64,000 nucleotides of DNA, from IMG/VR virus record IMGVR_UViG_3300049793_000366, positions 62,001 to 126,000 of that record; one strand, given 5' to 3'. The notes below the pieces were generated by a model. That model was not told the origin of the DNA. It made no database searches and saw nothing but the letters and a program-made list of their open reading frames with translations. Numbering within the stretch: position 1 is the first letter of the stretch; each line of letters opens with the position of its first letter. Made by a program: the position numbers and the translations under genes. Shown here piece after piece: positions 21,293 to 51,468 of the stretch.

Positions 21293-21320
21293 ATTATATA
21301 CGGGCTATTAATGAAAGTTT
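21293..21320 (-). promoter_or_regulatory. Candidate middle (ECF-sigma) promoter
   Basis: Minus strand AAACTT-N16-TATAAT, 5 nt before the ATG at 21288. Confidence 0.65.
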
Positions 21321-22293
21321 ATTTAATCTTGATATTGAAGTAAATCCAATAATTATGTGGTTTAACTGATACTAATATCTTTTCAGACCAATTGTATTTG
21401 GTTAACCAAGTTTTGAAGTTTTGCTTGATGTTTTCGTATTCACCTTGGTCGAGATTCATACCATCCCATTTACCAACACCATATAAACCAAATGACATAA
21501 CACCATTTGTAATTTGAATAGGGCTTCTTTCTTGATAGTTAGATGGTTTGTATTCAAGTAATTCACGCTTAACTATCATGAATAATTTTATAATTCTTAT
21601 TGTAGTATCTTTCAACTCTTTTCTAAAGCTATTTAAAGACTTGTTTGGCTTGTTTAAAATAGAAATCAATACAGAGTCAGTCATTTTAAATTGACCCATT
21701 AAAATGCGCTCTCCGTCTACTAATACACCATAATCTAAATATACTGTGTTGTTGTTAAATGAAACACCGTAAAACAAACCAGATGTCTTCTTAGCTTGTT
21801 GTATATGTTGTGCGCCTATTTGTAATGAGCGATATCTTGATAGTAAATCTGATATATCCATCTTATCACCATCACAAGACCAATAAGCATAATAATCTCT
21901 TGGACAATCTTTCCAATTAGGCTCTAATTTTGATTGTAAAGCTGTTAGAACGTAAAGAAAGCAATTAAATGTGTATTTGCCTGATATTGCTACTTTTTCT
22001 ATCTCATCCATTGTTGCTGTGTTTTCATTCACAACATCAGTAGTCGCAATAACTTCTGTGTGGTCTTGATGTCCAGATATAGTATCTTCAATTTCTTTAA
22101 TGAGTACCTTTTGGTCATAATCGCTTAATAAATTAACAGCATTTGATACTGAAATATCAGGGCTAATATTGTTTATATACTTATTTACAATCTTAACTAA
22201 ATCTTTATTACCTTCTAATTGCTTCTCAACCCACTGTCCTGTTGTGGACTCGGTTGACTCTGTAATAAAATCGCTATATTTCTTAATTCTCAT
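21319..22293 (-). CDS. Hypothetical protein with capsid-targeting-like leader
   Basis: MRIKKYSDFITES. Confidence 0.6.
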   Translation of the reverse strand: MRIKKYSDFITESTESTTGQWVEKQLEGNKDLVKIVNKYINNISPDISVSNAVNLLSDYDQKVLIKEIEDTISGHQDHTEVIATTDVVNENTATMDEIEKVAISGKYTFNCFLYVLTALQSKLEPNWKDCPRDYYAYWSCDGDKMDISDLLSRYRSLQIGAQHIQQAKKTSGLFYGVSFNNNTVYLDYGVLVDGERILMGQFKMTDSVLISILNKPNKSLNSFRKELKDTTIRIIKLFMIVKRELLEYKPSNYQERSPIQITNGVMSFGLYGVGKWDGMNLDQGEYENIKQNFKTWLTKYNWSEKILVSVKPHNYWIYFNIKIK

Positions 22294-23101
22294 TTTCAAC
22301 ATTGTTATTTAATTCACCATCATTTATCGGTGTGAATTCAGAAAACTTCTGAACTGTTGGTTGTATATTCGTTACTTCTTCTGCGCCTAATGCGCTTTCT
22401 ATATCAGTAACTTGTGCATCTTTCAAATTAAACCTTTCTTTCATCTTAGATATTAAATCTACGATATAGTTATTTGTAATTAGTGTAGTTAATCCAGACC
22501 CAGCACCAATGAGCATACCTGGTAATACTTCCATATCAATCTTATACTTATCTATTAAATTTGATAGTATTTGTATGATTGGTGTTAACAAAGTCATATA
22601 ATTAAACAAGTCCAAGAACTGATAAACTAATTTACCGATATGTTTAGAGATGATGTTAAATATAGAGCGAATAGAATTAATACATCTAACGGCTTTCTTA
22701 ACAATACCATATATCCCCTGCATTCTAAATTCTTCCAATTCTAATTGGATATCTCTAACTATTAATTCTTTTTCCTTAATTGGTATATCTGCTCTTTTGT
22801 CTTCAACGTGCGTTATTGCTACCGCGCATATCGTCATATTAACAACCATATCTGGTGTTATTGTAACAGTTGACTTCTCGTTTTTAACTAAACTATTTAT
22901 AAAGTCATATAGCGGTAGAATATCGATTGACCTAATAAAGTCGAAACTATGCTTTAAATCATTAAATGCTTTGTTGTGTAGTTCATCCCATGTTGTGGAA
23001 GAAGATTCGTGTAAATTATCAGATAATAGACCCTTTAGGAAATCTTGACAAAAGACTTCCATGTATGACTGTGAATACTCTTCGAATTTTTGAACCTTCA
23101 T
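22283..23101 (-). CDS. Hypothetical protein with capsid-targeting-like leader
   Basis: MKVQKFEEY; AATATATA at 23107-23114 on the minus strand. Confidence 0.6.
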   Translation of the reverse strand: MKVQKFEEYSQSYMEVFCQDFLKGLLSDNLHESSSTTWDELHNKAFNDLKHSFDFIRSIDILPLYDFINSLVKNEKSTVTITPDMVVNMTICAVAITHVEDKRADIPIKEKELIVRDIQLELEEFRMQGIYGIVKKAVRCINSIRSIFNIISKHIGKLVYQFLDLFNYMTLLTPIIQILSNLIDKYKIDMEVLPGMLIGAGSGLTTLITNNYIVDLISKMKERFNLKDAQVTDIESALGAEEVTNIQPTVQKFSEFTPINDGELNNNVENEN

Positions 23102-23129
23102 GTTCCTATATATTAAATGTCAAAATTAA

Positions 23130-23507
23130 TTAGCCGAAATAAGAATAGACTTCATAATCTTTTATCTTGAAGTCAATAAACATCATATCTTGATATCTTT
23201 CCGGATCTGCGACAAATCTAACATCTAATACATAGTTGATTCCTGCAATTTCTGTGATGTAGCTTTCTATCTGACTTATTATTTCAGATTTTATAAAGTC
23301 AGATGAAACTCTTGTTTCGTGTAAATATTTATATAAATCGGCACCAAACTCTGGATCCCCAAGTAATTCGCCTTTTGAAGTGAATAATATCATTTCATAT
23401 TTTTGAATAATTACTTCTATGACTTCATCTTCGATGATTTCATTTGGGTTATACCTATGATGACCTTCGTATAGAATATAGAAGTCTGTGAAATTGAAAT
23501 TAGCCAT
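23130..23507 (-). CDS. gp25: Baseplate wedge protein, gp25/GPW-like
   Basis: ILFTSKGELLGDPEFGADLYKYLHE pattern. Confidence 0.8.
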   Translation of the reverse strand: MANFNFTDFYILYEGHHRYNPNEIIEDEVIEVIIQKYEMILFTSKGELLGDPEFGADLYKYLHETRVSSDFIKSEIISQIESYITEIAGINYVLDVRFVADPERYQDMMFIDFKIKDYEVYSYFG

Positions 23508-23537
23508 AGATTATATATAAAAAAAGAATTATTACCA

Positions 23538-23792
23538 ATGTGGTTTGTTTACTTAGTTGAATGTTCGGATGGTACGTTGTATTGTGGTATATCAAATGAT
23601 GTTGATAAGCGCATAGATAAGCATAATACCAAAAAGGGTGCTAAATACACATCAACGAGAACACCTGTAAGACTTGTATATAAAGAAAAAGCAGATGATA
23701 GGTCATCTGCTTCAAAAAGGGAATATGTTATAAAGAAATTAAGTAGAGATAAAAAACTATTATTGATTAAGAGCTTTAACCTCGCCGAATAA
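23538..23792 (+). CDS. Small GIY-YIG nuclease (YhbQ-like)
   Basis: FVYLVECSDGTLYCGISNDVDKRIDKHN...GAKYT...REYVIK. Confidence 0.9.
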   Translation: MWFVYLVECSDGTLYCGISNDVDKRIDKHNTKKGAKYTSTRTPVRLVYKEKADDRSSASKREYVIKKLSRDKKLLLIKSFNLAE

Positions 23793-24704: not shown

Positions 24705-24709
24705 ATGTT

Positions 24710-24737
24710 ATTGTATTTAAAAATGAAGCAATGGTTT
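24710..24737 (-). promoter_or_regulatory. Candidate middle promoter for the clamp loader
   Basis: Minus strand AAACCA-N16-TACAAT. Confidence 0.45.
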
Positions 24738-24781
24738 TAGAATATATAATGGTATTATTTAAAATAAACAAAGTTTATAAA

Positions 24782-26098: not shown

Positions 26099-26163
26099 TA
26101 AAGGGGAAAAAACGAGTTTTAAAATAAATATATATAGTAATATATAAAAAAAATATCTTAGAT

Positions 26164-27456: not shown

Positions 27457-27476
27457 TCAATTTCTTGAGATAAATT

Positions 27477-27506: not shown

Positions 27507-27528
27507 GTGCCTTTTACAAACCTTTTCT

Positions 27529-27556
27529 AAACTTATCATGATGAGTATTGTATAAT
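27529..27556 (+). promoter_or_regulatory. Candidate middle (ECF-sigma) promoter of the late sigma gene
   Basis: AAACTT-N16-TATAAT. Confidence 0.65.
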
Positions 27557-27596
27557 TTTAAACTATCCAATTGGATCTAAAAACTAATGACTATGA

Positions 27597-27962
27597 ATGT
27601 ATTTAAATAATCGAGATTTATTTGTTGAAATCGTTGTGTCTAAAGCACAGGGCAAATTAACACCAAAGGCAAAAGTAATGCTTGAACTTCTTGCAAAGAA
27701 GACTATTAAAAAAATGCGTTACTATAACAACGACGATAGAATGGATTGTTATCAATCAGGTCTTCTTGATATGTTTTCAAACTGGCATAACTTCAATGAA
27801 GAGAAATCAACAAATGCTTTCGCTTATTATACAGAAATCTTCAAAAGAGGATTAGCAAAGGGATATAATGAATTGTATAAGAAAAAAGGCGATGCCGAAC
27901 ATTTAATTAAACTAGTATCATTGGATAGCTCTAATGATGGACAAGGATTACACTCAATATAA
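27597..27962 (+). CDS. gp55: Late-transcription sigma factor, gp55-like
   Basis: YLNNRDL start, DRMDCYQSG, KSTNAFAYYTEIFKR (equivalent to the NPFAYFTQ motif of gp55-like proteins). Confidence 0.8.
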   Translation: MYLNNRDLFVEIVVSKAQGKLTPKAKVMLELLAKKTIKKMRYYNNDDRMDCYQSGLLDMFSNWHNFNEEKSTNAFAYYTEIFKRGLAKGYNELYKKKGDAEHLIKLVSLDSSNDGQGLHSI

Positions 27963-29533: not shown

Positions 29534-29591
29534 TTATAAGTAAAAGGAAAACTGGAAACTAAATATATACCTAAAAATTAGCAAAAATTTA

Positions 29592-33710: not shown

Positions 33711-33718
33711 AATATATA
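33711..33718 (+). promoter_or_regulatory. Late promoter core AATATATA (major capsid gene)
   Basis: 31 nt upstream of the capsid start, in a context similar to 31332-31380. Confidence 0.7.
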
Positions 33719-37346: not shown

Positions 37347-37399
37347 GTTTTTAAAACAATTATACATTTATTCGTATAAATTAAAAATTAGCAGTAATA

Positions 37400-37879
37400 A
37401 TGAAGAAAATCGAAACCGAAAAATCAGAAGACTTTGAAAAAATATTTGAAAGTTTCTCTAAGGAGAATTCTGATAATACTGTGGATAGCAGACCAATCGC
37501 TATTCACCACGTTGAGAGACAAAAAACATATTTATGGATTAGAGTTTACCTTTCAGTTGAAAGAGTAGATTTAACACCAAATGATGTAATTACTGTTACA
37601 TACGCACCAACCAATGAAAAGCTTAACGCTAAATTTGCGTGTTATGCTAAAAAAGGATTGGATAAAGATGGTGGTGAATTTATAAATGCTTACAATCCAG
37701 AAGATGATAAGAAGATATTATGTCTAATGGTTGATAGTGATGATTTAGGATTTCACATACCTACATTGAGTTCTTTATTCAAGAATACAATACATTATAA
37801 ACACCAACTTTTGAAAAGAAGTGAGTTAACATTTTCGTTTAAAAATTCTGATTTAGAATATTTCGATAGCGAATTTTAA
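37400..37879 (+). CDS. Hypothetical protein
   Basis: 159-aa ORF. Confidence 0.55.
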   Translation: MKKIETEKSEDFEKIFESFSKENSDNTVDSRPIAIHHVERQKTYLWIRVYLSVERVDLTPNDVITVTYAPTNEKLNAKFACYAKKGLDKDGGEFINAYNPEDDKKILCLMVDSDDLGFHIPTLSSLFKNTIHYKHQLLKRSELTFSFKNSDLEYFDSEF

Positions 37880-40100: not shown

Positions 40101-40133
40101 ATACTATATATTGATATTGAGTATCTATGGGTA

Positions 40134-40161
40134 AAACTTTCTCACAAACAATTTGTATAAT
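40134..40161 (+). promoter_or_regulatory. Candidate middle (ECF-sigma) promoter of polB
   Basis: AAACTT-N16-TATAAT. Confidence 0.65.
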
Positions 40162-40181
40162 ACTAAAATAAAATACTAAAA

Positions 40182-41699
40182 TTGTTAATCGATACTCAAT
40201 ACCTGGCTCATTCAAAACAGCTACTAGCTTCATATGTTGACGCAAGTGGTCAAATAAAACATAAGTACTTTAAGTGGGATGACCCACGAAAGTATGAGAT
40301 TTGTGACGTATCAGATAAACACAAGCATCCAACATTTCGCTCTTGGGATGGATATCCAGTAAAACAAGTGGAAGTATCTCATCCTGATAGATATGCTATT
40401 TATGAATTTTTGGACTCTTTACCAAAAGAACAAAAAGCTGAAATTTTTGACTACCATTTACCTAAAATGTACTTTGTCGATATTGAGGTTGCTCAGAAGC
40501 CAGAAGGTGGATTCTCTGAACCAAAAGATGCGGAGTGCCCAATTATATCTATATCAGTTGTATATGATGATAAAATCATATTAATGGGTACTGATGAAAT
40601 GCCAAAAGAAATGCAAACTCGAATAATCGAAAAAACAAATGATTATTTTAAGAAGTTTGGTGTTGAATATAAATTCAAATACATGAAGTATGATGATGAG
40701 TTCGATATGATGAGACATTTCTTTGAACACTATATTCCTAAAATGCCTTTAATCACTGGTTGGAATTTCGTTGGCTATGACTGGGTATATATGGTTAATA
40801 GATGTAGACGCTTAAAGAAAGTCATCAATGGTATCACTAATCACATTGACCCTGCTATTTCTTCTTTTACAAAACGTTTAAATAAAATATTCTTAACAGA
40901 GCAAGAAATGCCTGCTCATAGAATGATTTTTGACTATATGCAATTGTATGAAATATGTGATACATCTGTTAAGGTTAAAGAATCATCATCATTAGATTTC
41001 GTATCTACTGCTCTATTAGGTGTTAATAAGATTAAATATACTGGTTCATTACAGAAGTTATATGAAGATGATTTTGAAACATTCATGTACTACAACTGTG
41101 TCGATTCAATTCTTGTTCAGAAAATACACGAGAAAACAAACTACATATCAATTGTATTTGCGATTTCCTCATTGGCTCAAATAAAAATTGTAGACGTTAT
41201 TTCCAACTTAAATAATGCGCTTGGTTCATTAGCTATCACTGAAGGTGTATTGCGTAATAGATTCCGTGAGCAAGATAACATTGTTCTATTTAAAGACCAT
41301 TCGGTTAAGGAGGTAGCGGTTGATGCTTCTAAAATTGAGGGTGGATGGGTTAAAGACCCAAGAGTTGGGATGAATCAGTGGGTTGTATGTTATGACTTTG
41401 CTTCTCTATATCCAACTACACAAAGACAGTTTTATATCGCACCAGAGACATTCGTAGGTATTGTTGATAAGAAAGACCCATCCTTCGCTGAATATGGTTC
41501 TCGTGTTACTAAAATAGAACCAGATAAGCACGTAGTTTGTGTGAATGGTGTTGTATTCGAAAAACGTCCGTCACCAACATTACGAATGTTGGAAGATGTT
41601 TATGCTGACCGTAAGAAAGCTAAGAAGGTAATGATGGGTAAAAAGGACGAATATTATAAAGTTTTGGAAGAAATTAAACAATTAGAGGATAGTTTATAA
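40182..41699 (+). CDS. Family B DNA polymerase, N-terminal subunit of a split enzyme
   Basis: Exo I FVDIEV, Exo II GWNFVGYD, Exo III YNCVDS, motif A CYDFASLYP and DRKKAK; ends before the KxxxNSxYG and YGDTDS motifs. Confidence 0.88.
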   Translation: MLIDTQYLAHSKQLLASYVDASGQIKHKYFKWDDPRKYEICDVSDKHKHPTFRSWDGYPVKQVEVSHPDRYAIYEFLDSLPKEQKAEIFDYHLPKMYFVDIEVAQKPEGGFSEPKDAECPIISISVVYDDKIILMGTDEMPKEMQTRIIEKTNDYFKKFGVEYKFKYMKYDDEFDMMRHFFEHYIPKMPLITGWNFVGYDWVYMVNRCRRLKKVINGITNHIDPAISSFTKRLNKIFLTEQEMPAHRMIFDYMQLYEICDTSVKVKESSSLDFVSTALLGVNKIKYTGSLQKLYEDDFETFMYYNCVDSILVQKIHEKTNYISIVFAISSLAQIKIVDVISNLNNALGSLAITEGVLRNRFREQDNIVLFKDHSVKEVAVDASKIEGGWVKDPRVGMNQWVVCYDFASLYPTTQRQFYIAPETFVGIVDKKDPSFAEYGSRVTKIEPDKHVVCVNGVVFEKRPSPTLRMLEDVYADRKKAKKVMMGKKDEYYKVLEEIKQLEDSL

Positions 41700-41720
41700 A
41701 ATTTTTAGTATATTTGTATC

Positions 41721-42404
41721 ATGGATGTAAAATCATTTAATAATTATAATATGGACAAAGTTGATATTTTCGGTGATTCTCAAGTAGGACCTGCTAAAGT
41801 TTTGAAAACTGAACCATATGGTGAAGGATTTGTAGTGTACACAAATGCTGGTGGATTCTATATAAGTGAAAAAACTTGCCCATCTATTGTTGTGGATAGT
41901 GGTGTTTTAATAAAACCACATCTTGATTACACATATGTGTTCGATACTGATTCAAAAACCATCGTTGATATTGCGATGTCAACGGTTGATTTGTTGATAT
42001 TTCATAAGAACTCAAATAGTTTACAATTACTTGCTATAAAAAGAGGACACCCGCCATTCGTTGGTTCATGGGCTAATCCGGGTGGTAACATTGATGAAAG
42101 CGAAGCACCAATACAAGCGGCTATTCGTGAATTGGAAGAAGAAACGAGTGTTATTCTATCTGATACTGATTTGAAATTCATCGGTAAGTTTGATAAGCCT
42201 TGGAGAGATCCAAGAAGTAAAATATGCGTTAGTTATGCTTTCGCTTGTGTTTTATCAGAGAAGCCAGCTACCGTAGCTCAGGATGATGCCGATGATGTTA
42301 CTTGGTTAGATATTGTTGATGGTAAAATTCTTAATAATGGTGTAGCTGTTGAAATGGCTTTTGACCACGAAGAGATTATTAAATCAGCACTTACACTAAT
42401 TTAA
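41721..42404 (+). CDS. Nudix hydrolase (ADP-ribose pyrophosphatase-like)
   Basis: Nudix box GGNIDESEAPIQAAIRELEEET, plus RDPR and AFDH; TATATTTG at 41709-41716. Confidence 0.88.
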   Translation: MDVKSFNNYNMDKVDIFGDSQVGPAKVLKTEPYGEGFVVYTNAGGFYISEKTCPSIVVDSGVLIKPHLDYTYVFDTDSKTIVDIAMSTVDLLIFHKNSNSLQLLAIKRGHPPFVGSWANPGGNIDESEAPIQAAIRELEEETSVILSDTDLKFIGKFDKPWRDPRSKICVSYAFACVLSEKPATVAQDDADDVTWLDIVDGKILNNGVAVEMAFDHEEIIKSALTLI

Positions 42405-42967: not shown

Positions 42968-43013
42968 AAATATTTAGTATATTTGTTTGTATAACTCTTG
43001 ATGTATATATTAA

Positions 43014-43040
43014 AAACTTACGCTAATTATTAAATATAAC
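43014..43040 (+). promoter_or_regulatory. Candidate middle promoter of the helicase
   Basis: AAACTT-N15-TATAAC. Confidence 0.45.
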
Positions 43041-43044
43041 ATCA

Positions 43045-44715
43045 ATGAGAGACCTTAAGAAAGACCTAAAATACAAACCGCGTAAGGAACAACAAGAATC
43101 ACTTGATTTTGTAGGCGATATTTTCAAAAATAAACCAAATTATAAACATATTCTACTTGATTTACCAGTGGGTATTGGTAAGTCATATCTTGCTCTTATG
43201 GTTGCTGATTGGTATCAAAAGAACATCGACAAGAGTGCTAAGTTTGATATCCTAACAAATTCAAAATATCTTCAAGAGCAATACACTGATGAATTTCAGT
43301 CTATACAATCACTATCAGGAAAGGATAATTTCAATTGTGACCAATATGCTTGTTCTTGCGCCCAGGGTAAAGAATTCAATCGTTTAAATAAAACATCTTG
43401 TGATTCTTGTCCATATGATAGAGCAAAAGCTGGTTTCGTAACTGGTGATGTTTCTCTTACTAACTTTCACTTGTATATTCTATATGCATTGTATATGCCA
43501 GAATTTCTAAAGGGTAGAGGTGCTAAGGTTTTGATTATTGATGAGGCACATGATTTTGACCAAATATTCTCAGACTTTATTTCTATTTCAATCACTGAGC
43601 CATTAGTTAAACGATTGAGATTTTCTAATGATACTCAGATTATAAGCGACCTTAATAAGGTTAAAACAGTTAATGATTATGTTAGTTTTCTTAAGGATTT
43701 ACTTGGTGAGATTAAGCAAACTGTTTCTGAAATAGAGAAAGTTCTTGGTACTTCAAATAAAAACACTAAAATAACAAAGCGCAACCAGAAGGTGAGTAAA
43801 GTTTTAAGTGAAAGAACATCTGATGTTAAATTAATGTCAACCATAGCTGATTTAAATCAGTTAGAGTTGAAGATTGAAGTATTCTTAAAGGAGTTTAAAG
43901 AAGAACCTGAGAATTGGGTATTAGAAAGTTCATATAATGAAAAAACAAGACAGAAATCATTATCACTTGAACCAATATGGGCATATAACTACTTAGATAA
44001 GTATATTTGGTCTAACTACGACCATATTATTATGATGTCTGGGACAATTCTTGATAAGAATTTATTCTGTTATCTCAATGGTTTAGATGTTACGCAAACC
44101 GCGTACTATTCAATACCATCACCGTTTCCTGCTACGAATAGACCAATCTATTATATGCCGGTTGCTCGAATGACGTATCAGAACAAGGAAGCGGCATTTA
44201 AGCAATACGTACCATATATCGATAAGTTATTATCCAAATATCAAAATCATAAAGGAATTATACACACGAATTCATTTGAATTAGCCAATTGGATAAAACG
44301 TGATGTGAAAGATAAAAGGCTTCTATTTCACGAGTCTGATACCAAGTCTGAAATATTACGTCAGCACTTTGATACTGATAAACCAACAGTTGTTGTTAGT
44401 CCTTCGGTTTCTACTGGTGTATCATTTGATAATGACCGAAGTAGATTTCAAGTAATTGCTAAAATTCCATTTCCATCATTAGCTTCACAGAAGAATAAGA
44501 TGCGTCAGAAAATGATGCCTGATTGGTATAGTTGGAGAACAGTGGCTACGATGATTCAAATGACTGGTCGTTCAGTTCGTTCATTTAACGATTATGCTGA
44601 TACTATTATAATTGATGGATGTTTCTCTGATATTATGAAGTACTCAAGCCATTTGCTACCTGGTTACATACAGGATGCTATTAAGAAGATTAATGTTAAT
44701 GCGACATCCAAATAG
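43045..44715 (+). CDS. DinG/XPD-like SF2 helicase
   Basis: PVGIGKS, Cys cluster (CDQYACSC...CDSCPY), IIDEAH, MMSGT, STGVSF and QMTGRSVR. Confidence 0.88.
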   Translation: MRDLKKDLKYKPRKEQQESLDFVGDIFKNKPNYKHILLDLPVGIGKSYLALMVADWYQKNIDKSAKFDILTNSKYLQEQYTDEFQSIQSLSGKDNFNCDQYACSCAQGKEFNRLNKTSCDSCPYDRAKAGFVTGDVSLTNFHLYILYALYMPEFLKGRGAKVLIIDEAHDFDQIFSDFISISITEPLVKRLRFSNDTQIISDLNKVKTVNDYVSFLKDLLGEIKQTVSEIEKVLGTSNKNTKITKRNQKVSKVLSERTSDVKLMSTIADLNQLELKIEVFLKEFKEEPENWVLESSYNEKTRQKSLSLEPIWAYNYLDKYIWSNYDHIIMMSGTILDKNLFCYLNGLDVTQTAYYSIPSPFPATNRPIYYMPVARMTYQNKEAAFKQYVPYIDKLLSKYQNHKGIIHTNSFELANWIKRDVKDKRLLFHESDTKSEILRQHFDTDKPTVVVSPSVSTGVSFDNDRSRFQVIAKIPFPSLASQKNKMRQKMMPDWYSWRTVATMIQMTGRSVRSFNDYADTIIIDGCFSDIMKYSSHLLPGYIQDAIKKINVNATSK

Positions 44716-45193: not shown

Positions 45194-45197
45194 CGTA

Positions 45198-45812: not shown

Positions 45813-45830
45813 GTAGTATATATTAAAACA

Positions 45831-45855
45831 AAAAGCGAGTCTTTCGACTCGCTTA
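45831..45855 (-). terminator. Intrinsic terminator
   Basis: AAAAAGCGAGTC-TTTC-GACTCGCTT. Confidence 0.8.
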
Positions 45856-45881
45856 ATTTGAACAAATATTATTGATTAAAA

Positions 45882-46475: not shown

Positions 46476-46546
46476 ATTAATCAATATTTTTTGTTATTTG
46501 TAGTATTATATATTAAATTGAAAAACTCAATTTTCATACATTATCA

Positions 46547-47044: not shown

Positions 47045-47045
47045 C

Positions 47046-47462
47046 TTATTTTGTTTTATTTTTTAGTGAATTAAGTAAATCATCACCTTCTCGTTTAACT
47101 GGATTCTTAAGTAACTCAGCTATTTTGTCCTGCGTCTCTTTTAGCTTTTTCCTAGTTTCTTCAAGTCCCTTTTGTGCATAAGCTACCTGATTGGCTAACA
47201 ATACGTTACCTCTTGCTAGGTCTTCAACCAGTTGAGTTTTAACCGCGATGGTAGCTTCTAAATCTTTCTGTTGGTCTTGTAACACTTTGATGTTAGCATC
47301 TCTTTGTGCTTTCTCTTTCTGAATTAGTTCAATCTGACCTTCTAATTCTTTGATTTTTGATTTGGCAACGTCATCTCCTTTGAAATACCATTTACCCACA
47401 AATACCAATGATATGATTAGTAAAACTACTATAATCCAGCTTTTTACGTCTAATTTCTTCAT
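47046..47462 (-). CDS. N-anchored coiled-coil membrane protein (i-spanin-like)
   Basis: Single N-terminal hydrophobic helix followed by about 100 aa of heptad coiled coil; AATATATA at 47496-47503. Confidence 0.6.
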   Translation of the reverse strand: MKKLDVKSWIIVVLLIISLVFVGKWYFKGDDVAKSKIKELEGQIELIQKEKAQRDANIKVLQDQQKDLEATIAVKTQLVEDLARGNVLLANQVAYAQKGLEETRKKLKETQDKIAELLKNPVKREGDDLLNSLKNKTK

Positions 47463-47551
47463 ATTTTTAATATTTTTTGATATATTGACTTTTGGTATAT
47501 ATTACGAATTGCTATATTCGTCAAAAAATGTCCAATATTCTGGTTAAAATA

Positions 47552-47583
47552 TTTGGTTTTCTGATATTAATTTACGATATTTG
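47552..47583 (+). promoter_or_regulatory. Near-consensus Bacteroidota promoter
   Basis: TTTG-N20-GATATTTG upstream of the HAD gene. Confidence 0.55.
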
Positions 47584-47614
47584 TAATCACAATTAAATAA
47601 AATAGCGGACATAA

Positions 47615-48130
47615 ATGAAAGATATCCAAAACATAATAGTATTTGACTTCGATAAAACTCTTATATACACAGTTGAAAGAGAAGAAGGTGAGAAGTTATA
47701 TAAGCAAGCTACTGGTAGAGACTGGGAGCATAAAGGGTGGTGGAGTCGTAAGGAAACGCTTGATATCGATATATTCTATCCCGTTAAGAATGAATGGGTT
47801 TACAAAAAATACCTTGAGGCTAAAGCTATGCCGAACACTATCATAATTCTTATGACTGGTCGTATTCTTCCATTAGAAGATGCTGTTATGAAGATATTAA
47901 ACCATCACGAGTTTGAGTTTGACCGCGTTTTCTGCTGTGATCCTCGTCAGGGTGGTGGTCACCCAATGGGCGCAACTTATGGCTTTAAGCTTAAAAAGTT
48001 TGAATCTTTGCTTCGTGAGTTCCCATATGCGAACCTAACTATGTATGACGATAGAACTGAACACGTTTTGGAATTCCAAAAGTGGGCAAGAACAACTAAA
48101 AGAAATATAGAAATTGTACACGTTAAATAA
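47615..48130 (+). CDS. HAD phosphatase resembling the 'Swiss Army Knife' RNA-repair HAD family
   Basis: VFDFDKTL, WWSRKETLD, ILMTGR, FK..F..LL and MYDDRTEH. Confidence 0.75.
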   Translation: MKDIQNIIVFDFDKTLIYTVEREEGEKLYKQATGRDWEHKGWWSRKETLDIDIFYPVKNEWVYKKYLEAKAMPNTIIILMTGRILPLEDAVMKILNHHEFEFDRVFCCDPRQGGGHPMGATYGFKLKKFESLLREFPYANLTMYDDRTEHVLEFQKWARTTKRNIEIVHVK

Positions 48131-48240
48131 TGAATCACAACGAGAAATTATTTATAATAATATTGTTCGTTTTGGGCATGGGTTATTTGATAATAACTGG
48201 TTTCATGTTTATAATTGATATTTTACATCGTATTTTATAA
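48130..48240 (+). CDS. Small membrane protein (36 aa)
   Basis: Not in the ORF track. The ATG overlaps the previous TAA and gives MNHNEKLFIIILFVLGMGYLIITGFMFIIDILHRIL. Confidence 0.45.
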   Translation: MNHNEKLFIIILFVLGMGYLIITGFMFIIDILHRIL

Positions 48241-48299
48241 CAAACAAATCAATTAAAAAGTAATATATAATCAACAAAATAAGATAAAAATCAAAAGAA

Positions 48300-48578
48300 A
48301 TGACAATAACTAAAGAAAAGAAGGATGCGAGTGTAAAGGAAACAACCGCGCATACTAAAAAACTTGTGTTACACAATGATGATTTCAACTCATTCGACCA
48401 TGTTATCGACTCACTCGTACAAGTGTGTGGACACCAGAGTGAGCAGGCAACGCAGTGTGCCTATATTGTTCACTATAAAGGTGAGTGTGATGTTAAATTA
48501 GGTGACGAAGAGACACTTTCTCTTATGAAAGATAAGCTGGTATTCAGAGGTCTTTCTGTTACCTTAGAAGATAATTAA
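48300..48578 (+). CDS. clpS: ClpS N-degron adaptor
   Basis: LVLHNDDFNSFDHVIDSLVQVC...QA.QCAYIVHYKG. Confidence 0.88.
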   Translation: MTITKEKKDASVKETTAHTKKLVLHNDDFNSFDHVIDSLVQVCGHQSEQATQCAYIVHYKGECDVKLGDEETLSLMKDKLVFRGLSVTLEDN

Positions 48579-48579
48579 T

Positions 48580-49365
48580 ATGAATGACAAAGAACTCCTA
48601 TTATCAATTTTAAATGCACCAGATCCATCAGCAGAGCTTATTAAGCTTGATGAATCTGGTGTACTTGATAAATTATTGCCCGAACTTACGGCATTAAAGG
48701 GAGTTGATTCTATTGATGGCCAACAACATAAAGATAACTTCGCACATACTTTACAGGTTTTAAAACAAACTGCTGAAGTATCACAGAATCCTTATCTAAG
48801 ATTAGTTGCCATTCTACACGATGCTGGTAAAGCACCAACCAAAAGATTCGATAAAGAGAGAGGATGGACATTTCACGACCATGAAAATGTAAGTGCTAAA
48901 ATGTCTGTTAAATTATTCAACAGATTAAACCTCGATATTGAAAATCTTGACTATGTTTCTACAATAATAAAATTTCATGGTATAACCAAAGCTCTTACTG
49001 AGCCAGGTGTTACTGACACTGCTATCAAACGATTCTATAATGAATTGGGTGAGTATGTGAGTGATTTATTATTATTTTGTAGTTGTGATATGACCACTAA
49101 ATCAGAAGCTAAACGTCTTAGATTTAGAAAAAGTCTAATAGAACTACACGAGAGAATTACTTCGATTAAGGAATCAGAAGAAGCTAAATTATGGAGGTCA
49201 CCAATCACTGGTGATTTTATCATGAAGGAGCTTGATATAAAGCCTTCTAAGAGGTTGGGTAATATTAAGTCTGAGATAGAACGTGCTATCAAAGCAAATG
49301 AAGTAGAGGATAATTTTGAATCTGCTTACAAGTATTTGTATCTTATCAAAGATAAGTTTCCTTAG
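48580..49365 (+). CDS. HD-domain protein corresponding to the C-terminal half of HD-type CCA-adding enzymes
   Basis: LLPEL...HKDNFAHTLQV...AILHDAGKAPT...FHDHE...A, SPITGDFIMKEL.IKP...LG.IK; no nucleotidyltransferase head. Confidence 0.8.
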   Translation: MNDKELLLSILNAPDPSAELIKLDESGVLDKLLPELTALKGVDSIDGQQHKDNFAHTLQVLKQTAEVSQNPYLRLVAILHDAGKAPTKRFDKERGWTFHDHENVSAKMSVKLFNRLNLDIENLDYVSTIIKFHGITKALTEPGVTDTAIKRFYNELGEYVSDLLLFCSCDMTTKSEAKRLRFRKSLIELHERITSIKESEEAKLWRSPITGDFIMKELDIKPSKRLGNIKSEIERAIKANEVEDNFESAYKYLYLIKDKFP

Positions 49366-49379
49366 TAATTTTTCTTTTT

Positions 49380-49706
49380 ATGACACCACAACAAATCCAA
49401 TTACAGCTACTTAAGCTGTGTCCTAAATTTAATAATAACGCTGATGATATTATCAGAAGCCTTATTGATAATGAACCATATTGGGATTCAATGATTGTGG
49501 ATAATGATTTGATGGTTAAATTAAGAGATTTGGGTACTGGTATCTGGAATGCTGATACTATTTATATAATGACTCACCACCGCGATGTGATGGAGCCAGT
49601 TGTAGAAAGCTGGAATCCCTCTGCCTGGGAATGGATTTCAAATCCGGATGATTTCTTAGGTGGTGCTGATGTAGATTGTCAGGTTGTTAAAGTATGGTTC
49701 GATTAA
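49380..49706 (+). CDS. Hypothetical protein
   Basis: 108-aa ORF in an operon-like run. Confidence 0.55.
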   Translation: MTPQQIQLQLLKLCPKFNNNADDIIRSLIDNEPYWDSMIVDNDLMVKLRDLGTGIWNADTIYIMTHHRDVMEPVVESWNPSAWEWISNPDDFLGGADVDCQVVKVWFD

Positions 49707-49716
49707 TAAGAAATAT

Positions 49717-49896
49717 ATGATATCAAATAACTTTTTAGACGAAATGACTAAGCTTGGTTATAGCGTCCATATTGATGTAGATGAAAAAATAAAAATAATT
49801 AAGGACAATCAGGAAATAATCCTTAGCTTTGAAAAAATTAGACGCATTTTTTTAAATGCTTTAGTGTCACACATAGATAACGCAAAAGATGTATAA
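49717..49896 (+). CDS. Hypothetical protein
   Basis: Probable start MISNNF. Confidence 0.45.
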   Translation: MISNNFLDEMTKLGYSVHIDVDEKIKIIKDNQEIILSFEKIRRIFLNALVSHIDNAKDV

Positions 49897-50197
49897 GTTC
49901 GAACCAGATGAAATTAGAGACTTTAAAATCATTGATATCAATGGTGGTCTCAAAAAGAAAGTCAAACTTACTTTAGTTGGATTAGATGGTAATGCTCACA
50001 ATTTAATTGGTAAGTTTCAATTAGCCGCTAAGAAAGCTGGGTGGTCAAAAGAAGATGTTAATTTCGTAGTTTGGAAAGCAACATCTGGTAATTATGATAA
50101 TCTTCTTGCTACTCTGATGGAATATTCATCGGATCCATTTGGTTCAGACGATGATGATATCGTCTATGTAGATGGTCAACCTTATAAAAAGATGTAA
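49889..50197 (+). CDS. Hypothetical protein
   Basis: LVGLDGNAHNLIG...A.K.GW....SGNYDNLL motif, which I recall from other small phage proteins. Confidence 0.6.
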   Translation: MYKFEPDEIRDFKIIDINGGLKKKVKLTLVGLDGNAHNLIGKFQLAAKKAGWSKEDVNFVVWKATSGNYDNLLATLMEYSSDPFGSDDDDIVYVDGQPYKKM

Positions 50198-50198
50198 A

Positions 50199-50657
50199 AT
50201 GGTAATGGAGATAACAGTATTGGTTTTATGTTTGTCGTTATTAGTCATGTCGTTTCTTGCCGTGAAGCAATATGGTAACAACCTACACCTGAGAGAAGAG
50301 AACGAATTATTAAAGAAGGAAGTCACTAAAAGCAAAACAGATAAGGATTATCTCGTTTCTATTGACCCTGGTGATAGAGCTATCATTCCTAACTATTCTT
50401 TGGTATACGCAAAGGGTGAAAAAGATGAACATCATTTCGAAGTAACATATGAAGTGGAGATAGTAGAAGTATCTCTTGATAAAGTAAAAGTTAAAGCAAC
50501 TGGATTAACAACACACGATAGTAAAATAAATAACGAGCCGTCACGCCGGGCATCATGTATAGCATTTATGCAGGACAAATGGATAAGCAGAAAAAGTATA
50601 GAATTAGTGGTGGATGACACAATGCGAAGAGATGCAAAATTACAACAATTATTATAG
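50199..50657 (+). CDS. N-anchored membrane protein
   Basis: Hydrophobic N-terminus VLVLCLSLLVMSFLAV; ends RDAKLQQLL. Confidence 0.55.
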   Translation: MVMEITVLVLCLSLLVMSFLAVKQYGNNLHLREENELLKKEVTKSKTDKDYLVSIDPGDRAIIPNYSLVYAKGEKDEHHFEVTYEVEIVEVSLDKVKVKATGLTTHDSKINNEPSRRASCIAFMQDKWISRKSIELVVDDTMRRDAKLQQLL

Positions 50658-50678
50658 TAATTTATGCTTAGGAAGCAA

Positions 50679-50706
50679 CAACTATTTTATAAATAATTAC
50701 TATAAT
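50679..50706 (+). promoter_or_regulatory. Candidate autoregulatory ECF promoter
   Basis: CAACTA-N16-TATAAT upstream of the ECF sigma gene. Confidence 0.55.
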
Positions 50707-50757
50707 AGTAATAACGGCAATTGAGGTAATCAAAAATTAAAAAATTAACGGCAATTT

Positions 50758-51378
50758 ATGAATTTAGACGGCAATCTAGTTGAATTTTCTGAACAAGAAA
50801 CTCTTTTCAGAGAGCGAACAGGGAACGATTTCGCATTCTTTTACAAGAAATATTACCCAAAACTTATTTACTACACATCCAAAATGTGTAATGATCCTCA
50901 AGAAGCAGAGGATGTATCTACCGAATCTTTTATGGTAGCTCTTCAAAAAATCGACAAGTACGAGAAAGACAAAGCACAATTTTCCACTTGGTTATTTACG
51001 ATAGCTCGAAACCTTATGTTACAAAATTTAAAAAGCAAGAAAAAGTTTGTATCAATGGATTACGAGATTGATGAAGAGGGAACAACAATGAAAGACTTTA
51101 TCCAAGAACCACATCAAGAGGGTTCTCATTCAGATGAACAGTTCTATGAGCTTTTTGATAAAAAGGCTGAGATTCTGAAAAAACACATCGATAAGCTTGA
51201 ACCAATTTACCGTACGGTTATTGAAATGAGAGAGCTTAAAAAAATGCCCTACAAGGACATCGCGGTTATACTTAATCTGAATGAAAATACAGTTAAGTCG
51301 CAGATACGCAATGGGCGAATAAAACTACAGAAAATGGTCAAGAAAGAATTTGATGTTCTTGACGAAATGTTCACGTAG
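50758..51378 (+). CDS. ECF-type (RpoE-like) sigma-70 factor
   Basis: Region 2 EAEDVSTESF...FSTWLFTIARN; region 4 PYKDIAVILNLNENTVKSQIRNGRIKL. Confidence 0.9.
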   Translation: MNLDGNLVEFSEQETLFRERTGNDFAFFYKKYYPKLIYYTSKMCNDPQEAEDVSTESFMVALQKIDKYEKDKAQFSTWLFTIARNLMLQNLKSKKKFVSMDYEIDEEGTTMKDFIQEPHQEGSHSDEQFYELFDKKAEILKKHIDKLEPIYRTVIEMRELKKMPYKDIAVILNLNENTVKSQIRNGRIKLQKMVKKEFDVLDEMFT

Positions 51379-51407
51379 TATATTGATTACCTCCGTTAGT
51401 TATGAGA

Positions 51408-51439
51408 ATAGCCTCGACCAAAATCGGGGCTTATTTTTT
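51408..51439 (+). terminator. Intrinsic terminator
   Basis: AGCCTCGA-CCAAAA-TCGGGGCT followed by a T-tract. Confidence 0.7.
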
Positions 51440-51440
51440 G

Positions 51441-51468
51441 CAACTTATTACTATATACTCACTATAAT
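51441..51468 (+). promoter_or_regulatory. Candidate middle promoter of thioredoxin
   Basis: CAACTT-N16-TATAAT. Confidence 0.6.

What the first reader, a model, noticed from the sequence alone, without database searches (positions are those of the whole stretch)
21293..51468. Three-tier transcription cascade: an AAC-N17/18-TATAAY promoter class linked to the phage ECF sigma
Seen: AAACTT-N16-TATAAT before gp55 (27529), polB (40134) and the mini-capsid gene (21320, -); CAACTT-N16-TATAAT before thioredoxin (51441); CAACTA-N16-TATAAT before the ECF sigma itself (50679); variants before the clamp loader (24737, -) and helicase (43014). Known: ECF sigmas typically read an AAC-containing -35 (E. coli sigmaE GAACTT, 16-nt spacer) and often autoregulate; T4 uses AsiA/MotA for middle genes instead. 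Inference: host sigma drives early genes, the phage ECF sigma drives replication genes plus gp55, and gp55 drives AATATATA late genes.
Basis: partly seen in the sequence, partly recalled or inferred. Interest (0 to 1): 0.65.

Follow-up and report, generated by a model that had tools for sequence, protein, structure and literature searches.

The report
Megaphage middle promoters tied to ECF sigma
A 508-kb phage of Bacteroidota-type bacteria carries about 80-100 copies of a conserved two-box promoter (AAAC, 17-18 bases, TATAA) in front of its replication genes, its late-sigma gene and its own ECF-type sigma gene, which fits a host sigma, then phage ECF sigma, then gp55-like sigma cascade, although no transcript data exist to prove it.

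Summary
An unbiased search over the whole 507,910-bp genome recovers AACT-N17-TATAA as one of the most enriched two-box motifs upstream of genes (18 against 1.9 expected). The refined consensus is tTAAAC(T/A)(T/A)(T/A)t ... aTAtAAt, on about 100 genes.

Evidence that the sites are promoters:
- They sit in non-coding DNA in sense orientation.
- They are phased to start codons.
- Orthologous genes keep the class at about 49% protein identity (21 of 33, p 7e-11).
- AAAC-N17 or N18-TATAA is the top-ranked motif in LR756504 and Prevotella phage Lak-A1 and among the top few in an IMG/VR relative. It is not enriched in Bacteroidota phages lacking the sigma orthologue.

The regulon is replication, recombination and nucleotide genes, plus the gp55-like gene and the sigma gene.

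Two other classes exist. The other is the late AATATATA class, before the portal, capsid and terminase genes.

The link to the phage ECF sigma is inferred, not shown. It is the only detectable protein with sigma regions 2 and 4. It is closest to SigW. The -35 box has the ECF hallmark of AAC plus a T-tract. No AsiA, MotA or phage RNA polymerase was detected. I judge this a new variant of a known kind, the phage sigma cascade.

The parts
50758..51378 (+). ECF-type (group IV) sigma factor gene, 206 aa
   Evidence: Pfam Sigma70_r2 (E 1e-16) and Sigma70_r4_2 (E 8e-14) only. NCBIfam sigma70-ECF superfamily; best named relatives are Sig70_bacteroi1, SigW and SigM, all below their equivalog or subfamily cut-offs. 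Best solved structure is B. subtilis SigW, 5wuq, E 6e-17. It is the only ORF in the genome with a sigma region 4 match over the cut-off.
50677..50708 (+). Class A promoter of the sigma gene (AACAACTATT-N10-TTACTATAATAG), about 50 nt before the ATG
   Evidence: 16.9 bits. An equivalent nAACTTTT-N12-nnTATAAn site lies 70-100 nt upstream of the sigma ATG in all 13 IMG/VR relatives with 55-66% identical sigma.
50714..50775 (+). Three copies of ACGGCAAT in the sigma leader and first codons (50714, 50748, 50768); unexplained
   Evidence: Two or three copies of AACGGCAA(T/A), the last directly before the ATG, occur in all 13 relatives.
51410..51440 (+). Intrinsic-terminator-like hairpin plus T-run directly after the sigma gene
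   Evidence: 8-pair stem with 5 GC pairs, then TATTTTTT. Its T-run abuts the thioredoxin promoter.
51439..51470 (+). Class A promoter of the thioredoxin gene (51493-51819)
   Evidence: 14.2 bits. Thioredoxin Pfam E 2e-25. Orthologues in G001 and LR756504 are also class A.
27527..27558 (+). Class A promoter of the gp55-like gene
   Evidence: 18.0 bits. 71 of 80 IMG/VR relatives have a class A site 40-57 nt upstream of this gene. These are 50 distinct sequences with diverged spacers and conserved AAAC and TATAA(C).
27597..27962 (+). gp55-like late sigma gene, 121 aa
   Evidence: PHROG 234 'late sigma transcription factor', E 1.4e-7. Weak Sigma70_r2 match, E 0.003. No region 4.
40132..40163 (+). 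Class A promoter of the family B DNA polymerase N-terminal half (40182-41699)
   Evidence: 18.7 bits. Pfam DNA_pol_B_exo1 and DNA_pol_B. The LR756504 orthologue is class A.
41674..41704 (+). Class A promoter of the NUDIX hydrolase gene (41721-42404)
   Evidence: 17.7 bits. Pfam NUDIX E 9e-17.
43012..43042 (+). Class A promoter of the helicase gene (43045-44715); leaderless-type spacing
   Evidence: 18.5 bits; the ATG follows the scored block by 2 nt. Pfam Helicase_C_2 and ResIII. The G001 orthologue is class A.
24709..24778 (-).
   Evidence: 15.7 bits and 16.0 bits. Pfam AAA and Gp44_lid. Orthologues in G001 and LR756504 are class A.
21291..21322 (-). Class A promoter of ORF 20932-21288 (118 aa, weak Gp23 N-terminal similarity); leaderless-type spacing
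   Evidence: 19.1 bits. Gp23 match E 6e-4, below the cut-off. The G001 orthologue is class A.
52778..52808 (-). Class A promoter of the UvsY-like gene (52283-52774)
   Evidence: 18.8 bits. PHROG 231 UvsY-like, E 3e-5. Orthologues in LR756504 and LR756501 are class A.
37352..37382 (+). Class A promoter of ORF 37400-37879 (function unknown)
   Evidence: 15.3 bits.
11236..11268 (+). Class A promoter of the SIS-domain (phosphoglucose-isomerase-like) gene 11270-12256
   Evidence: 15.5 bits. Pfam bact-PGI_C E 8e-46.
47549..47584 (+). Host-type (class H) promoter ATATTTGGT-N14-TTACGATATTTGT at the head of the plus-strand cluster 47615-51378, which ends with the sigma gene
   Evidence: 23.0 bits. Between it and the sigma gene the scan listed only one weak plus-strand hairpin (48445-48462, 5 pairs, not followed by a T-run).
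58619..58654 (+). Best class H promoter in the window (AAACTTGCA-N14-TCCGTATATTTGT)
   Evidence: 30.2 bits. Class H consensus is aTTTGg-N20-TAtATTTG, on 66 genes.
33711..33718 (+). Late-type AATATATA box before the Gp23-like major capsid gene (33750-35426)
29562..29569 (+). Late-type AATATATA box before the T4-like portal gene (29592-31331)
14461..14468 (-). Late-type AATATATA box before the large terminase gene (12253-14424)

Best explanation
The window lies in a 508-kb T4-like megaphage of the Mahaphage/Lak lineage that has no RNA polymerase of its own. It appears to programme the host core enzyme with three specificity factors in turn.

1. The host primary sigma, of Bacteroidota type, reads class H promoters, aTTTGg-N20-(tCCG)TAtATTTG. 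One of these heads the gene cluster that ends in the phage ECF-type sigma gene.
2. The phage ECF sigma (ORF 50758-51378) then reads class A promoters, tTAAAC(T/A)(T/A)(T/A)t followed 17-18 nt after the C by TAtAAt. These precede its own gene (positive feedback), the replication, recombination and nucleotide-metabolism genes, and the gp55-like gene.
3. The gp55-like protein reads (TT)AATATATA boxes before the virion genes.

Shown here: the three motif classes, their positions, their conservation and their gene sets.

Inferred: which protein reads which class, and the temporal order.
For: The motif class is real.
- Unbiased dyad enrichment recovers it. Enrichment against shuffles and confinement to non-coding sense positions hold.
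- Distance to the start codon is bimodal in all three classes. There is a sharp peak with the ATG 5 nt after the -10 box, almost no sites (one in class A, none in H or L) at 9-13 nt beyond the scored motif, then a broad mode.

It is conserved.
- AAAC-N17 or N18-TATAA is the top dyad in LR756504 and Lak-A1 and ranks fourth in G001.
- Class A is retained at orthologues: 21 of 33 in G001 (p 7e-11) and 12 of 25 in LR756504 (p 1e-5).
- 71 of 80 relatives keep it before the gp55-like gene, with diverged spacers. All 13 relatives keep it before the sigma gene.

The regulon is coherent. It comprises both halves of PolB, a gp32-like protein, primase, a Rad50-like protein, topoisomerase II, clamp loader, helicase, a UvsY-like protein, NUDIX, thioredoxin, methyltransferases, the sigma and the gp55-like gene. 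The late class precedes portal, capsid and terminase.

Link to the ECF sigma.
- It is the only detectable ORF with sigma regions 2 and 4. No AsiA, no MotA C-terminal domain and no RNA polymerase beta subunit were found. The search for a T7-type polymerase was also blank, but its control was uninformative.
- The host-type consensus is TAnnTTTG/TTTG, and classical -10/-35 boxes are not used by Bacteroidota (PMC7366714). E. coli-type promoters are not enriched here.
- The -35 block, AAAC plus a T-rich tract, matches the ECF hallmark tGAAACnTTTt (PMC5758882). The geometry matches SigW, TGAAAC-N16,17-CGTA(T) (PMC2375139).
- The sigma is closest to SigW. It keeps the SigW residues that read A-34 and C-31 (T178, K180, S181). 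It has lost the two arginines that read G-35 (Q182, N185). The motif has invariant AAAC and almost no G 5' of it (PMC6713349).
- The fixed pattern is enriched only in genomes carrying the sigma orthologue. It is not enriched in pT24, MaF61 or MA9V-2.
Against: - There is no transcript, start-site or biochemical evidence. Only the source DNA run holds this sequence.
- The co-occurrence of motif and sigma is confounded by shared ancestry, because it is effectively one clade.
- The -10 box, TAtAAt, lacks the CGT or GTC core usual for ECF promoters.
- LR756504 lacks a good class A site within 260 nt of its sigma gene.
- LR756501, whose sigma is 35% identical, shows only weak enrichment (9 against 2.0).
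- crAss-like phages with a 27-31% identical ECF sigma lack the motif.
- Most of the roughly 780 ORFs have no known function, so a divergent second sigma or a MotA-like activator could escape Pfam.
- Seven genes carry both class A and late boxes.
Confidence: 0.62

Rival explanations
1. Class A sites are genuine middle or early promoters, but they are read by host RNA polymerase redirected by an unidentified phage factor. This could be a sigma-appropriation system analogous to T4 AsiA/MotA, with AAAC(T)TT acting as an activator box, or a second, highly divergent phage sigma. The ECF sigma would then serve another small regulon.
For: Most of the roughly 780 ORFs have no family match. Divergent phage sigmas such as phiEco32 gp36 are hard to detect. 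The -10 box, TAtAAt, is not typical of ECF promoters. LR756504 carries extra sigma-like ORFs.
Against: No AsiA or MotCF match was found. Only one region 4 ORF exists. The -35 block matches the ECF AAC plus T-tract signature, and the sigma's DNA-contact residues fit it. The sigma gene carries the motif in all 13 relatives. The host sigma of Bacteroidota needs TTTG in its -7 box.
Confidence: 0.15
2. Class A promoters are read by a host ECF sigma that the phage exploits. The phage sigma would be a xenologue with the same or a different specificity.
For: Bacteroidota encode many ECF sigmas. AAC-type -35 boxes are generic to ECF sigmas.
Against: The motif is identical in phages from soil and from the gut genus Prevotella. 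That would require the same host ECF specificity across very different hosts, whereas the phage-borne sigma travels with the motif. The nearest cellular relatives found are at most about 30% identical, though that scan used only two peptide patterns.
Confidence: 0.1
3. The assignments of readers are right, but the order is not a strict three-tier cascade. Class A could be an early class, for example if the sigma is made immediately or delivered with the virion, running in parallel with class H rather than after it.
For: Classes H and A are interspersed along the genome and drive overlapping kinds of genes; NAD ligase and a CCA/poly(A) polymerase are class H. No timing data exist.
Against: Where the context could be read, the sigma gene either lies behind a host-type promoter, at the head of its cluster or in tandem (five of eleven loci), or follows co-directional genes. 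The gp55-like gene has only a class A site.
Confidence: 0.08
4. The sites are not promoters. They would be A+T-rich sequence near start codons, or translation signals, that match a loose pattern by chance.
For: The genome is 33% G+C and intergenic DNA is richer still in A+T. Bacteroidota use A-rich sequence before start codons.
Against: Enrichment holds against dinucleotide shuffles and against the antisense orientation. AAAC is invariant at a fixed distance of 17 or 18 nt. Spacers have diverged while the boxes are conserved across 50 distinct sequences. Class is retained at orthologues, p 7e-11. The pattern is absent from equally A+T-rich pT24.
Confidence: 0.03

Closest known systems
Bacillus phage SPO1 sigma cascade (host sigma A, then gp28, then gp33/34)
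   Same: A lytic phage without its own RNA polymerase switches host core enzyme from the host sigma to successive phage-encoded sigma-family proteins for middle and late genes (abstract of PMC13401047).
   Different: Here the middle factor is a recognisable ECF-type sigma (regions 2 and 4, closest to SigW). The late factor is a T4 gp55-type minimal sigma. The host is Bacteroidota-type with TTTG/TAnnTTTG promoters. Nothing has been shown experimentally.
Escherichia phage phiEco32 gp36 (with gp79)
   Same: A phage-encoded distant sigma homologue directs middle and late transcription by host core enzyme. Early genes use the host sigma (PMC12276001).
   Different: The phiEco32 promoters have a single AATGTA box at -11.5 and need gp79. 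Here the promoter is two-box, AAAC-N17/18-TATAA, and late genes use a separate gp55-like factor. No gp79-like partner has been identified.
Phage T4 early/middle/late programme (sigma70; AsiA plus MotA; gp55, gp33 and gp45)
   Same: The core is T4-like: Gp23 capsid, Gp20 portal, gp32-like, UvsY-like, gp44-like clamp loader and gp55-like proteins. A late box resembling TATAAATA precedes the virion genes. The middle class drives replication genes and the late-sigma gene.
   Different: No AsiA or MotA was detected. A complete ECF-type sigma would fill the middle tier instead of sigma appropriation.
B. subtilis SigW and E. coli sigma E promoters (cellular ECF sigmas)
   Same: The -35 box has AAC followed by a T-rich tract, with similar spacing to the -10 box, and the sigma gene is autoregulated. 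SigW is TGAAAC-N16,17-CGTA(T), and sigma E has GGAACTT as its -35 box. The residues reading A-34 and C-31 are kept.
   Different: The -10 box is TAtAAt rather than CGTA or TCTGA. There is no G at -35, and the two arginines that read it are replaced. There is no adjacent anti-sigma gene: the next gene is thioredoxin, with its own promoter. The regulon is phage replication, not envelope stress.
Group 2 jumbo phages as defined by Iyer et al. 2021
   Same: That survey noted that group 2 jumbo phages, including Lak, lack an RNA polymerase and encode both a minimal sigma and a fuller sigma. It inferred that they recruit host core enzyme (PMC7824862).
   Different: The passages of that survey I read, those mentioning sigma factors, give no promoter motifs, regulons or hierarchy. 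Those are what is added here.

Membership tests
ECF (group IV) sigma-70 family | Only sigma regions 2 and 4, about 200 aa, with no region 1.1 or 3 | tested here: met
   206 aa. Pfam Sigma70_r2 (residues 28-96) and Sigma70_r4_2 (142-190) only. NCBIfam sigma70-ECF superfamily, 92.8 bits against a cut-off of 42.9.
ECF (group IV) sigma-70 family | Cognate promoters with an AAC-containing -35 box, about 16-17 nt from a short -10 box | tested here: inconclusive
   The candidate regulon motif, AAAC plus T-tract then N17/18 then TATAA, fits the -35 rule and the spacing. Its -10 box is not CGT-type. That this sigma reads it has not been shown.
ECF (group IV) sigma-70 family | Co-transcribed anti-sigma factor | tested here: not met
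   The sigma gene ends in its own terminator. The next gene is a thioredoxin with its own promoter. The upstream ORFs 49889-50657 have no family match. This feature is common among ECF sigmas but not universal.
ECF (group IV) sigma-70 family | Positive autoregulation from its own promoter type | tested here: inconclusive
   A class A site lies upstream of the sigma gene here and in 13 of 13 close relatives. It was not found in LR756504. Its activity was not tested.
SigW / SigM / Sig70_bacteroi1 equivalogs or subfamilies | Score above the NCBIfam curated cut-off | tested here: not met
   SigW 90.6 bits against 209. Sig70_bacteroi1 92.9 against 126.4. SigM family 86 against 148. The protein is a relative, not a member.
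T4 gp55-type late sigma | Sequence membership in the gp55 family | tested here: met
   PHROG 234 'late sigma transcription factor', E 1.4e-7. The Sigma70_r2 match is weak (E 0.003) and there is no region 4. No solved-structure match by single sequence. At 121 aa it is shorter than T4 gp55 (about 185 aa, from my own knowledge), so membership is weakly supported.
T4 gp55-type late sigma | A single -10-type late box (T4: TATAAATA) before virion genes, with no -35 box | tested here: met
   AATATATA occurs 128 times upstream of genes against 12 expected. In the window, 24 of 28 copies lie within 60 nt upstream of a gene in sense orientation. It precedes portal, Gp23 and terminase. That gp55 reads it is inferred.
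T4 AsiA/MotA sigma appropriation | AsiA and MotA homologues present | tested here: not met
   No match to PF09010 or PF09158 in the 507,910-bp genome. Divergent analogues cannot be excluded.
Bacteroidota primary-sigma promoters | TTTG at about -33 and TAnnTTTG at about -7 | tested here: met
   Class H consensus is aTTTGg-N20-TAtATTTG, on 66 genes, with a single dominant spacing. The same TATATTTG enrichment is seen in Tenacibaculum phage pT24, and TATCTTTG in Prevotella phage Lak-A1. The consensus is taken from PMC7366714.

The most novel reading that the evidence does not exclude
An ECF-sigma-dependent middle regulon with the promoter AAAC-N17/18-TATAA is a defining, conserved feature of the whole Bacteroidota megaphage lineage, from soil Mahaphages to human-gut Lak phages, and stands in for the T4 AsiA/MotA system. 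In addition, about a third of the promoters of all three classes sit so that the transcript would start at the AUG. That would be a phage-wide use of leaderless mRNAs in a host phylum where they are rare (3.7% of B. thetaiotaomicron 5' UTRs are under 10 nt).
Probability: 0.4. Interest if true: 0.7.

Novelty: new variant of a known kind. Interest (0 to 1): 0.58.

Why it matters
None of the megaphages compared here comes from a cultured isolate, so nothing is known of how they run their very large gene sets. A defined promoter code for each tier lets anyone sort the hundreds of unknown genes in these genomes into early, middle and late classes from sequence alone. The three codes are TTTG-N20-TAnnTTTG, AAAC-N17/18-TATAA, and AATATATA (AATAAATA in Lak).

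It also offers a compact sigma-and-promoter pair that may be orthogonal to the Bacteroidota primary sigma. That would be of practical use for gene expression tools in Bacteroides and Flavobacteria.

Finally, it shows how a T4-like core can replace sigma appropriation with a captured ECF-type sigma.

Tried and rejected
- **A fourth promoter class.** The dyad GAGA-N17-TATTA (19 against 2.3 expected) turned out to be the coding C-terminus of a family of small paralogous genes, not a promoter.
- **RNA evidence.** The run search found only the source soil-metagenome DNA run. I therefore did not use read laying, and no start sites are available.
- **Cellular relatives of the sigma.** I hoped to borrow a known promoter from them. 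A genome-contig scan found only relatives at about 30% identity or less, from many phyla. The one 56% hit is on a MAG contig and is probably a mis-binned phage. I did not take this further.
- **crAss-like phages with a 27-31% identical ECF sigma, as an independent lineage.** There was no enrichment of the motif. This is uninformative at that divergence and with about 100 genes per genome.
- **E. coli-type sigma-70 promoter scan.** No enrichment: 26 found against 24 expected.
- **Solved structure related to the gp55-like protein.** No significant hit with a single sequence.
- **The costly protein searches** (search for homologous proteins, the search of protein representatives). I did not run them, because the family scans already placed the sigma.
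- **Genetic code.** I used table 11 throughout for the window. TAG was read as sense only in my gene-calling script for Lak-A1 and the two crAss-like genomes, where it raised coding coverage from 68-75% to 91-93%.

Full report
**What the window is**

The window is bases 62,001-126,000 of a single 507,910-bp, 33% G+C virus contig. Table 11 gives 780 crude genes covering 93.6% of the contig.

Its family B DNA polymerase and its sigma are closest to the 634-642-kb 'uncultured phage' genomes LR745206 and LR756502. Next come LR756504, LR756501/3 and the Prevotella Lak phages. These genomes belong to the Mahaphage clade, whose largest members and the Lak phages are predicted to infect Bacteroidetes (PMC7162821). 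The only public run that holds this sequence is a soil-metagenome DNA run.

**The observation**

The exact pattern AACTT-N15-17-TATAAT occurs four times in the window against 0.86 expected, and none of 100 shuffles reached four.

AACT-N17-TATAA (18 against 1.9 expected; 27 copies in the whole genome) and AAAC-N18-TATAA (20 against 2.6) rank among the top dozen dyads.

Iterative refinement gives the consensus tTAAAC(T/A)(T/A)(T/A)t ... aTAtAAt.
- A, A, A and C are at 80, 99, 98 and 99%.
- T, A, A and A of the -10 box are at 99, 99, 93 and 91%.
- The distance from the C to the first T of TATAA is 17 or 18 nt, in about equal numbers.
- About 100 genes have a site at 12 bits or more.
- At 14 bits or more there are 75 upstream regions against 3.3 in dinucleotide shuffles. 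Of 106 genome-wide hits, 78 lie in the 6.4% of the genome that is non-coding.

The matrix was trained on this genome, so the untrained fixed pattern is the cleaner number: 41 upstream regions against 5.6 in shuffles and 15 in antisense.

The site at 21293 (-) precedes ORF 20932-21288, not ORF 21319-22302.

**Are they promoters?**

Three independent kinds of evidence say yes.

1. *Phasing to the start codon.* The distance from the box to the start codon is bimodal. There is a sharp peak with the ATG 5 nt after TATAA(T), almost nothing (one site) at 9-13 nt beyond the scored motif, and then a broad mode. The same pattern holds for the other two motif classes and for class A in G001 and LR756504. 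This is what leaderless plus leadered transcripts would give.

2. *Conservation at orthologous genes.* With a median protein identity of 49%, 21 of 33 class A genes are class A in the IMG/VR relative G001 (Fisher p 7e-11). With LR756504 the figure is 12 of 25 (p 1e-5).

3. *Footprinting.* In 71 of 80 related contigs the gp55-like gene has a class A site 40-57 nt upstream. These are 50 distinct sequences in which AAAC and TATAA(C) are kept while the spacer has diverged. All 13 relatives with a 55-66% identical sigma have the site 70-100 nt before the sigma ATG.

**The other tiers**

The k-mer and dyad counts reveal two further classes.

*Class H.* The consensus is aTTTGg, 20 nt, (tCCG)TAtATTTG, found on 66 genes with essentially one spacing. 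This is the Bacteroidota primary-sigma consensus, TTTG at -33 and TAnnTTTG at -7. Classical -10/-35 boxes are not used in that phylum (PMC7366714). The same box is enriched in Tenacibaculum phage pT24, and a TATCTTTG version in Lak-A1. It matters because TATAAT is then not a host -10 box. E. coli-type promoters are not enriched in the window stretch I scanned (47300-52400).

*Class L.* The box is (TT)AATATATA, 128 upstream copies against 12 expected. In the window, 24 of 28 copies lie within 60 nt upstream of a gene in sense orientation. They precede the T4-like portal, the Gp23-like capsid protein and the large terminase.

A fourth apparent dyad, GAGA-N17-TATTA, is a coding C-terminal motif of a paralogous gene family, not a promoter.

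**The class A gene set**

In the window:
- PolB N-terminal half
- NUDIX hydrolase
- helicase
- gp44-like clamp loader
- UvsY-like protein
- thioredoxin
- a SIS-domain enzyme
- the gp55-like gene
- the sigma gene

Elsewhere in the genome, among genes whose class A label is shared with an orthologue:
- a gp32-like protein
- a Toprim primase
- a Rad50/SbcC-like ATPase
- two DNA methyltransferases
- adenylate kinase
- ClpP and a ClpB-like ATPase
- an S1-domain protein
- the PolB C-terminal half

The topoisomerase II subunit A gene is also class A in this genome, but its orthologues in G001 and LR756504 are not.

Class H genes include an NAD-dependent ligase, a CCA/poly(A) polymerase and a HAD-family protein.

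**Which factor reads class A?**

This step is inference. The genome has exactly one ORF with sigma region 2 above the cut-off and one with region 4, and they are the same ORF, 50758-51378. The only other region 2 signal is the gp55-like ORF. No AsiA, MotA C-terminal domain or RNA polymerase beta subunit is detectable. A T7-type polymerase search was also blank, but its control was uninformative. This agrees with the published view that group 2 jumbo phages, Lak included, lack a polymerase and carry a minimal sigma and a fuller sigma (PMC7824862).

The sigma is ECF-type: only regions 2 and 4, and a member of the NCBIfam sigma70-ECF superfamily. It is closest to Sig70_bacteroi1, SigW and SigM, but scores below their cut-offs. 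The best solved relative is B. subtilis SigW, E 6e-17.

The class A -35 block, AAAC followed by a T-rich tract, matches the ECF promoter signature tGAAACnTTTt described for B. subtilis (PMC5758882). SigW promoters are TGAAAC-N16,17-CGTA(T) (PMC2375139), which is compatible in geometry within about one base.

In the SigW sigma4/-35 structure, T168, K170 and T171 read A-34 and the partner of C-31, while R172 and R175 read G-35 (PMC6713349). By the alignment, the phage sigma has T178, K180 and S181 at the first set and Q182 and N185 at the second. T178, K180 and S181 are invariant or nearly so across the clade. The motif correspondingly has invariant A, A, A, C and almost no G at the position 5' of AAAC: 0-14% in four genomes. 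This agreement is suggestive, not a test.

**Distribution across phages**

The fixed pattern AAAC-N17/18-TATAA in upstream sense, against shuffled controls:

| Genome | Observed | Shuffled |
|---|---|---|
| This genome | 41 | 5.6 |
| G001 | 42 | 4.8 |
| LR756504 | 56 | 5.1 |
| Lak-A1 | 47 | 5.0 |
| LR756501 | 9 | 2.0 |
| Chryseobacterium phage MA9V-2 | 2 | 2.1 |
| Flavobacterium phage MaF61 | 1 | 1.2 |
| Tenacibaculum phage pT24 | 2 | 2.6 |
| crAss-like cr4_1 | 2 | 0.5 |
| crAss-like cr115_1 | 2 | 0.6 |

So it is enriched in the first four, weakly in LR756501, and not in the rest. The motif travels with the sigma orthologue. Because the carriers form one clade, the correlation is confounded by descent.

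**How the cascade would start**

The sigma gene has its own class A promoter (50677-50708) and its own terminator (51410-51431). It is the last gene of a plus-strand cluster headed by a class H promoter at 47549-47584, and between the two the scan listed only one weak hairpin (48445-48462, 5 pairs, no T-run). A class H site heads the equivalent cluster in four relatives. In the two relatives where the sigma gene follows divergent genes, a class H site lies about 100 nt upstream of the class A site.

The picture is host-sigma priming followed by positive feedback. The gp55-like gene has only a class A site.

**Weak points**

- There are no transcripts, no start sites and no biochemistry.
- The -10 box is TATAAT-like rather than the CGT-type usual for ECF sigmas.
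- There is no anti-sigma gene next to the sigma gene.
- LR756504 lacks a good class A site near its sigma gene.
- LR756501 shows only weak enrichment.
- Most ORFs are unannotated, so an undetected specificity factor remains possible.

**Comparison and novelty**

Sigma cascades in phages without their own polymerase are textbook: SPO1 and phiEco32 gp36 (PMC12276001). What is new here:
- the specific two-box promoter and its regulon;
- an ECF-type sigma in the middle tier of a T4-like core that lacks AsiA and MotA;
- conservation of the motif from soil megaphages to gut Lak phages.

In the literature I searched and read I found no description of these promoters. I rate this a new variant of a known kind.

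My confidence that class A is a genuine promoter class is about 0.9. My confidence in the full model, including the sigma assignment, is about 0.6.

Noticed in passing
window 50714-50775; also genome 230598-230613 (window coordinates about 168599, minus strand): ACGGCAAT occurs three times within 62 nt in the sigma leader and first codons. Genome-wide it occurs only 8 times against about 9.5 expected. Two or three copies of AACGGCAA(T/A), the last abutting the ATG, are kept in all 13 sigma relatives. The only other gene here with CGGCAA within 14 nt of its start is the gp32-like gene (AAACGGCAATTATG). This may be a translational or transcriptional operator.
   Followed up: partly
whole genome; in the window, for example 43012-43047, 21286-21322 (-) and 52772-52808 (-): In all three promoter classes about 30-45% of sites place the ATG 5 nt after the -10, -7 or late box, with almost no sites (one in class A, none in H or L) at 9-13 nt beyond the scored motif. 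This implies many leaderless mRNAs. In B. thetaiotaomicron only 3.7% of 5' UTRs are under 10 nt.
   Followed up: partly
window 40182-41699 (+) and genome 274856-276301 (-), outside the window: The family B DNA polymerase appears split into two genes more than 170 kb apart. The N-terminal piece covers the exonuclease domain plus polymerase profile positions 21-155. The C-terminal piece starts at profile position 137. Both have class A promoters.
   Followed up: partly
genome about 470,000-507,900 (window coordinates about 408,000-446,000), outside the window: At least a dozen near-identical class H modules of about 40 nt (ATTTGGTAATCCGGAATATTATCCGTATATTT) precede small ORFs at one end of the contig. 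This is probably an early-gene region. The conserved TCCGGAAT spacer may be an operator.
   Followed up: no
genome about 462,000-467,500 (window coordinates about 400,000-405,500), outside the window: A tandem family of small paralogous genes shares a C-terminal coding motif (GAGA-N17-TATTA, roughly R-D/E-x-x-L-x-x-L-L). It mimicked a promoter dyad in the enrichment screen.
   Followed up: partly
Prevotella phage Lak-A1, loci L188-L207: Lak-A1 shows the same three-class layout: AAAC-N18-TATAA (42 against 4.1, with almost only the 18-nt spacing), a host-type TGTATCTTTG box, and a late-like AATAAATA box. Its class A sites sit mostly 26-30 nt before the start codon.
   Followed up: partly
Flavobacterium phage MaF61, loci L060-L068: There is a different strong two-box motif, TGCAAC-N15-GCATT (20 upstream copies against 1.7 expected). 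The genome has no clear sigma: only a weak region 2 hit in a 238-aa ORF.
   Followed up: no
window 20932-21288 (-): A 118-aa ORF has sub-threshold similarity to the N-terminus of the Gp23 capsid protein. It carries one of the strongest class A sites in the window with leaderless-type spacing. Its 35% identical orthologue in G001 is also class A.
   Followed up: no
locus L120 (JALOAD010000029.1): A 43-kb contig binned in a 'Candidatus Muiribacterium halophilum' MAG encodes a sigma 56% identical to the phage sigma. All other cellular hits are at most about 30% identical. It is probably a megaphage contig mis-binned into the MAG.
   Followed up: no
LR756504 (W01), record positions 529326-529496 and 456128-456337: This relative has two further sigma region 2 matches besides the orthologue and the gp55-like ORF, so it may run additional promoter classes.
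   Followed up: no
window 48300-48578 (+); genome 189407-190066 (-) and 442219-444348 (+), both outside the window: The phage encodes a ClpS adaptor, ClpP and a ClpB/ClpC-like ATPase. The last two are behind class A promoters. Together they would form a phage-borne proteolysis module.
   Followed up: no
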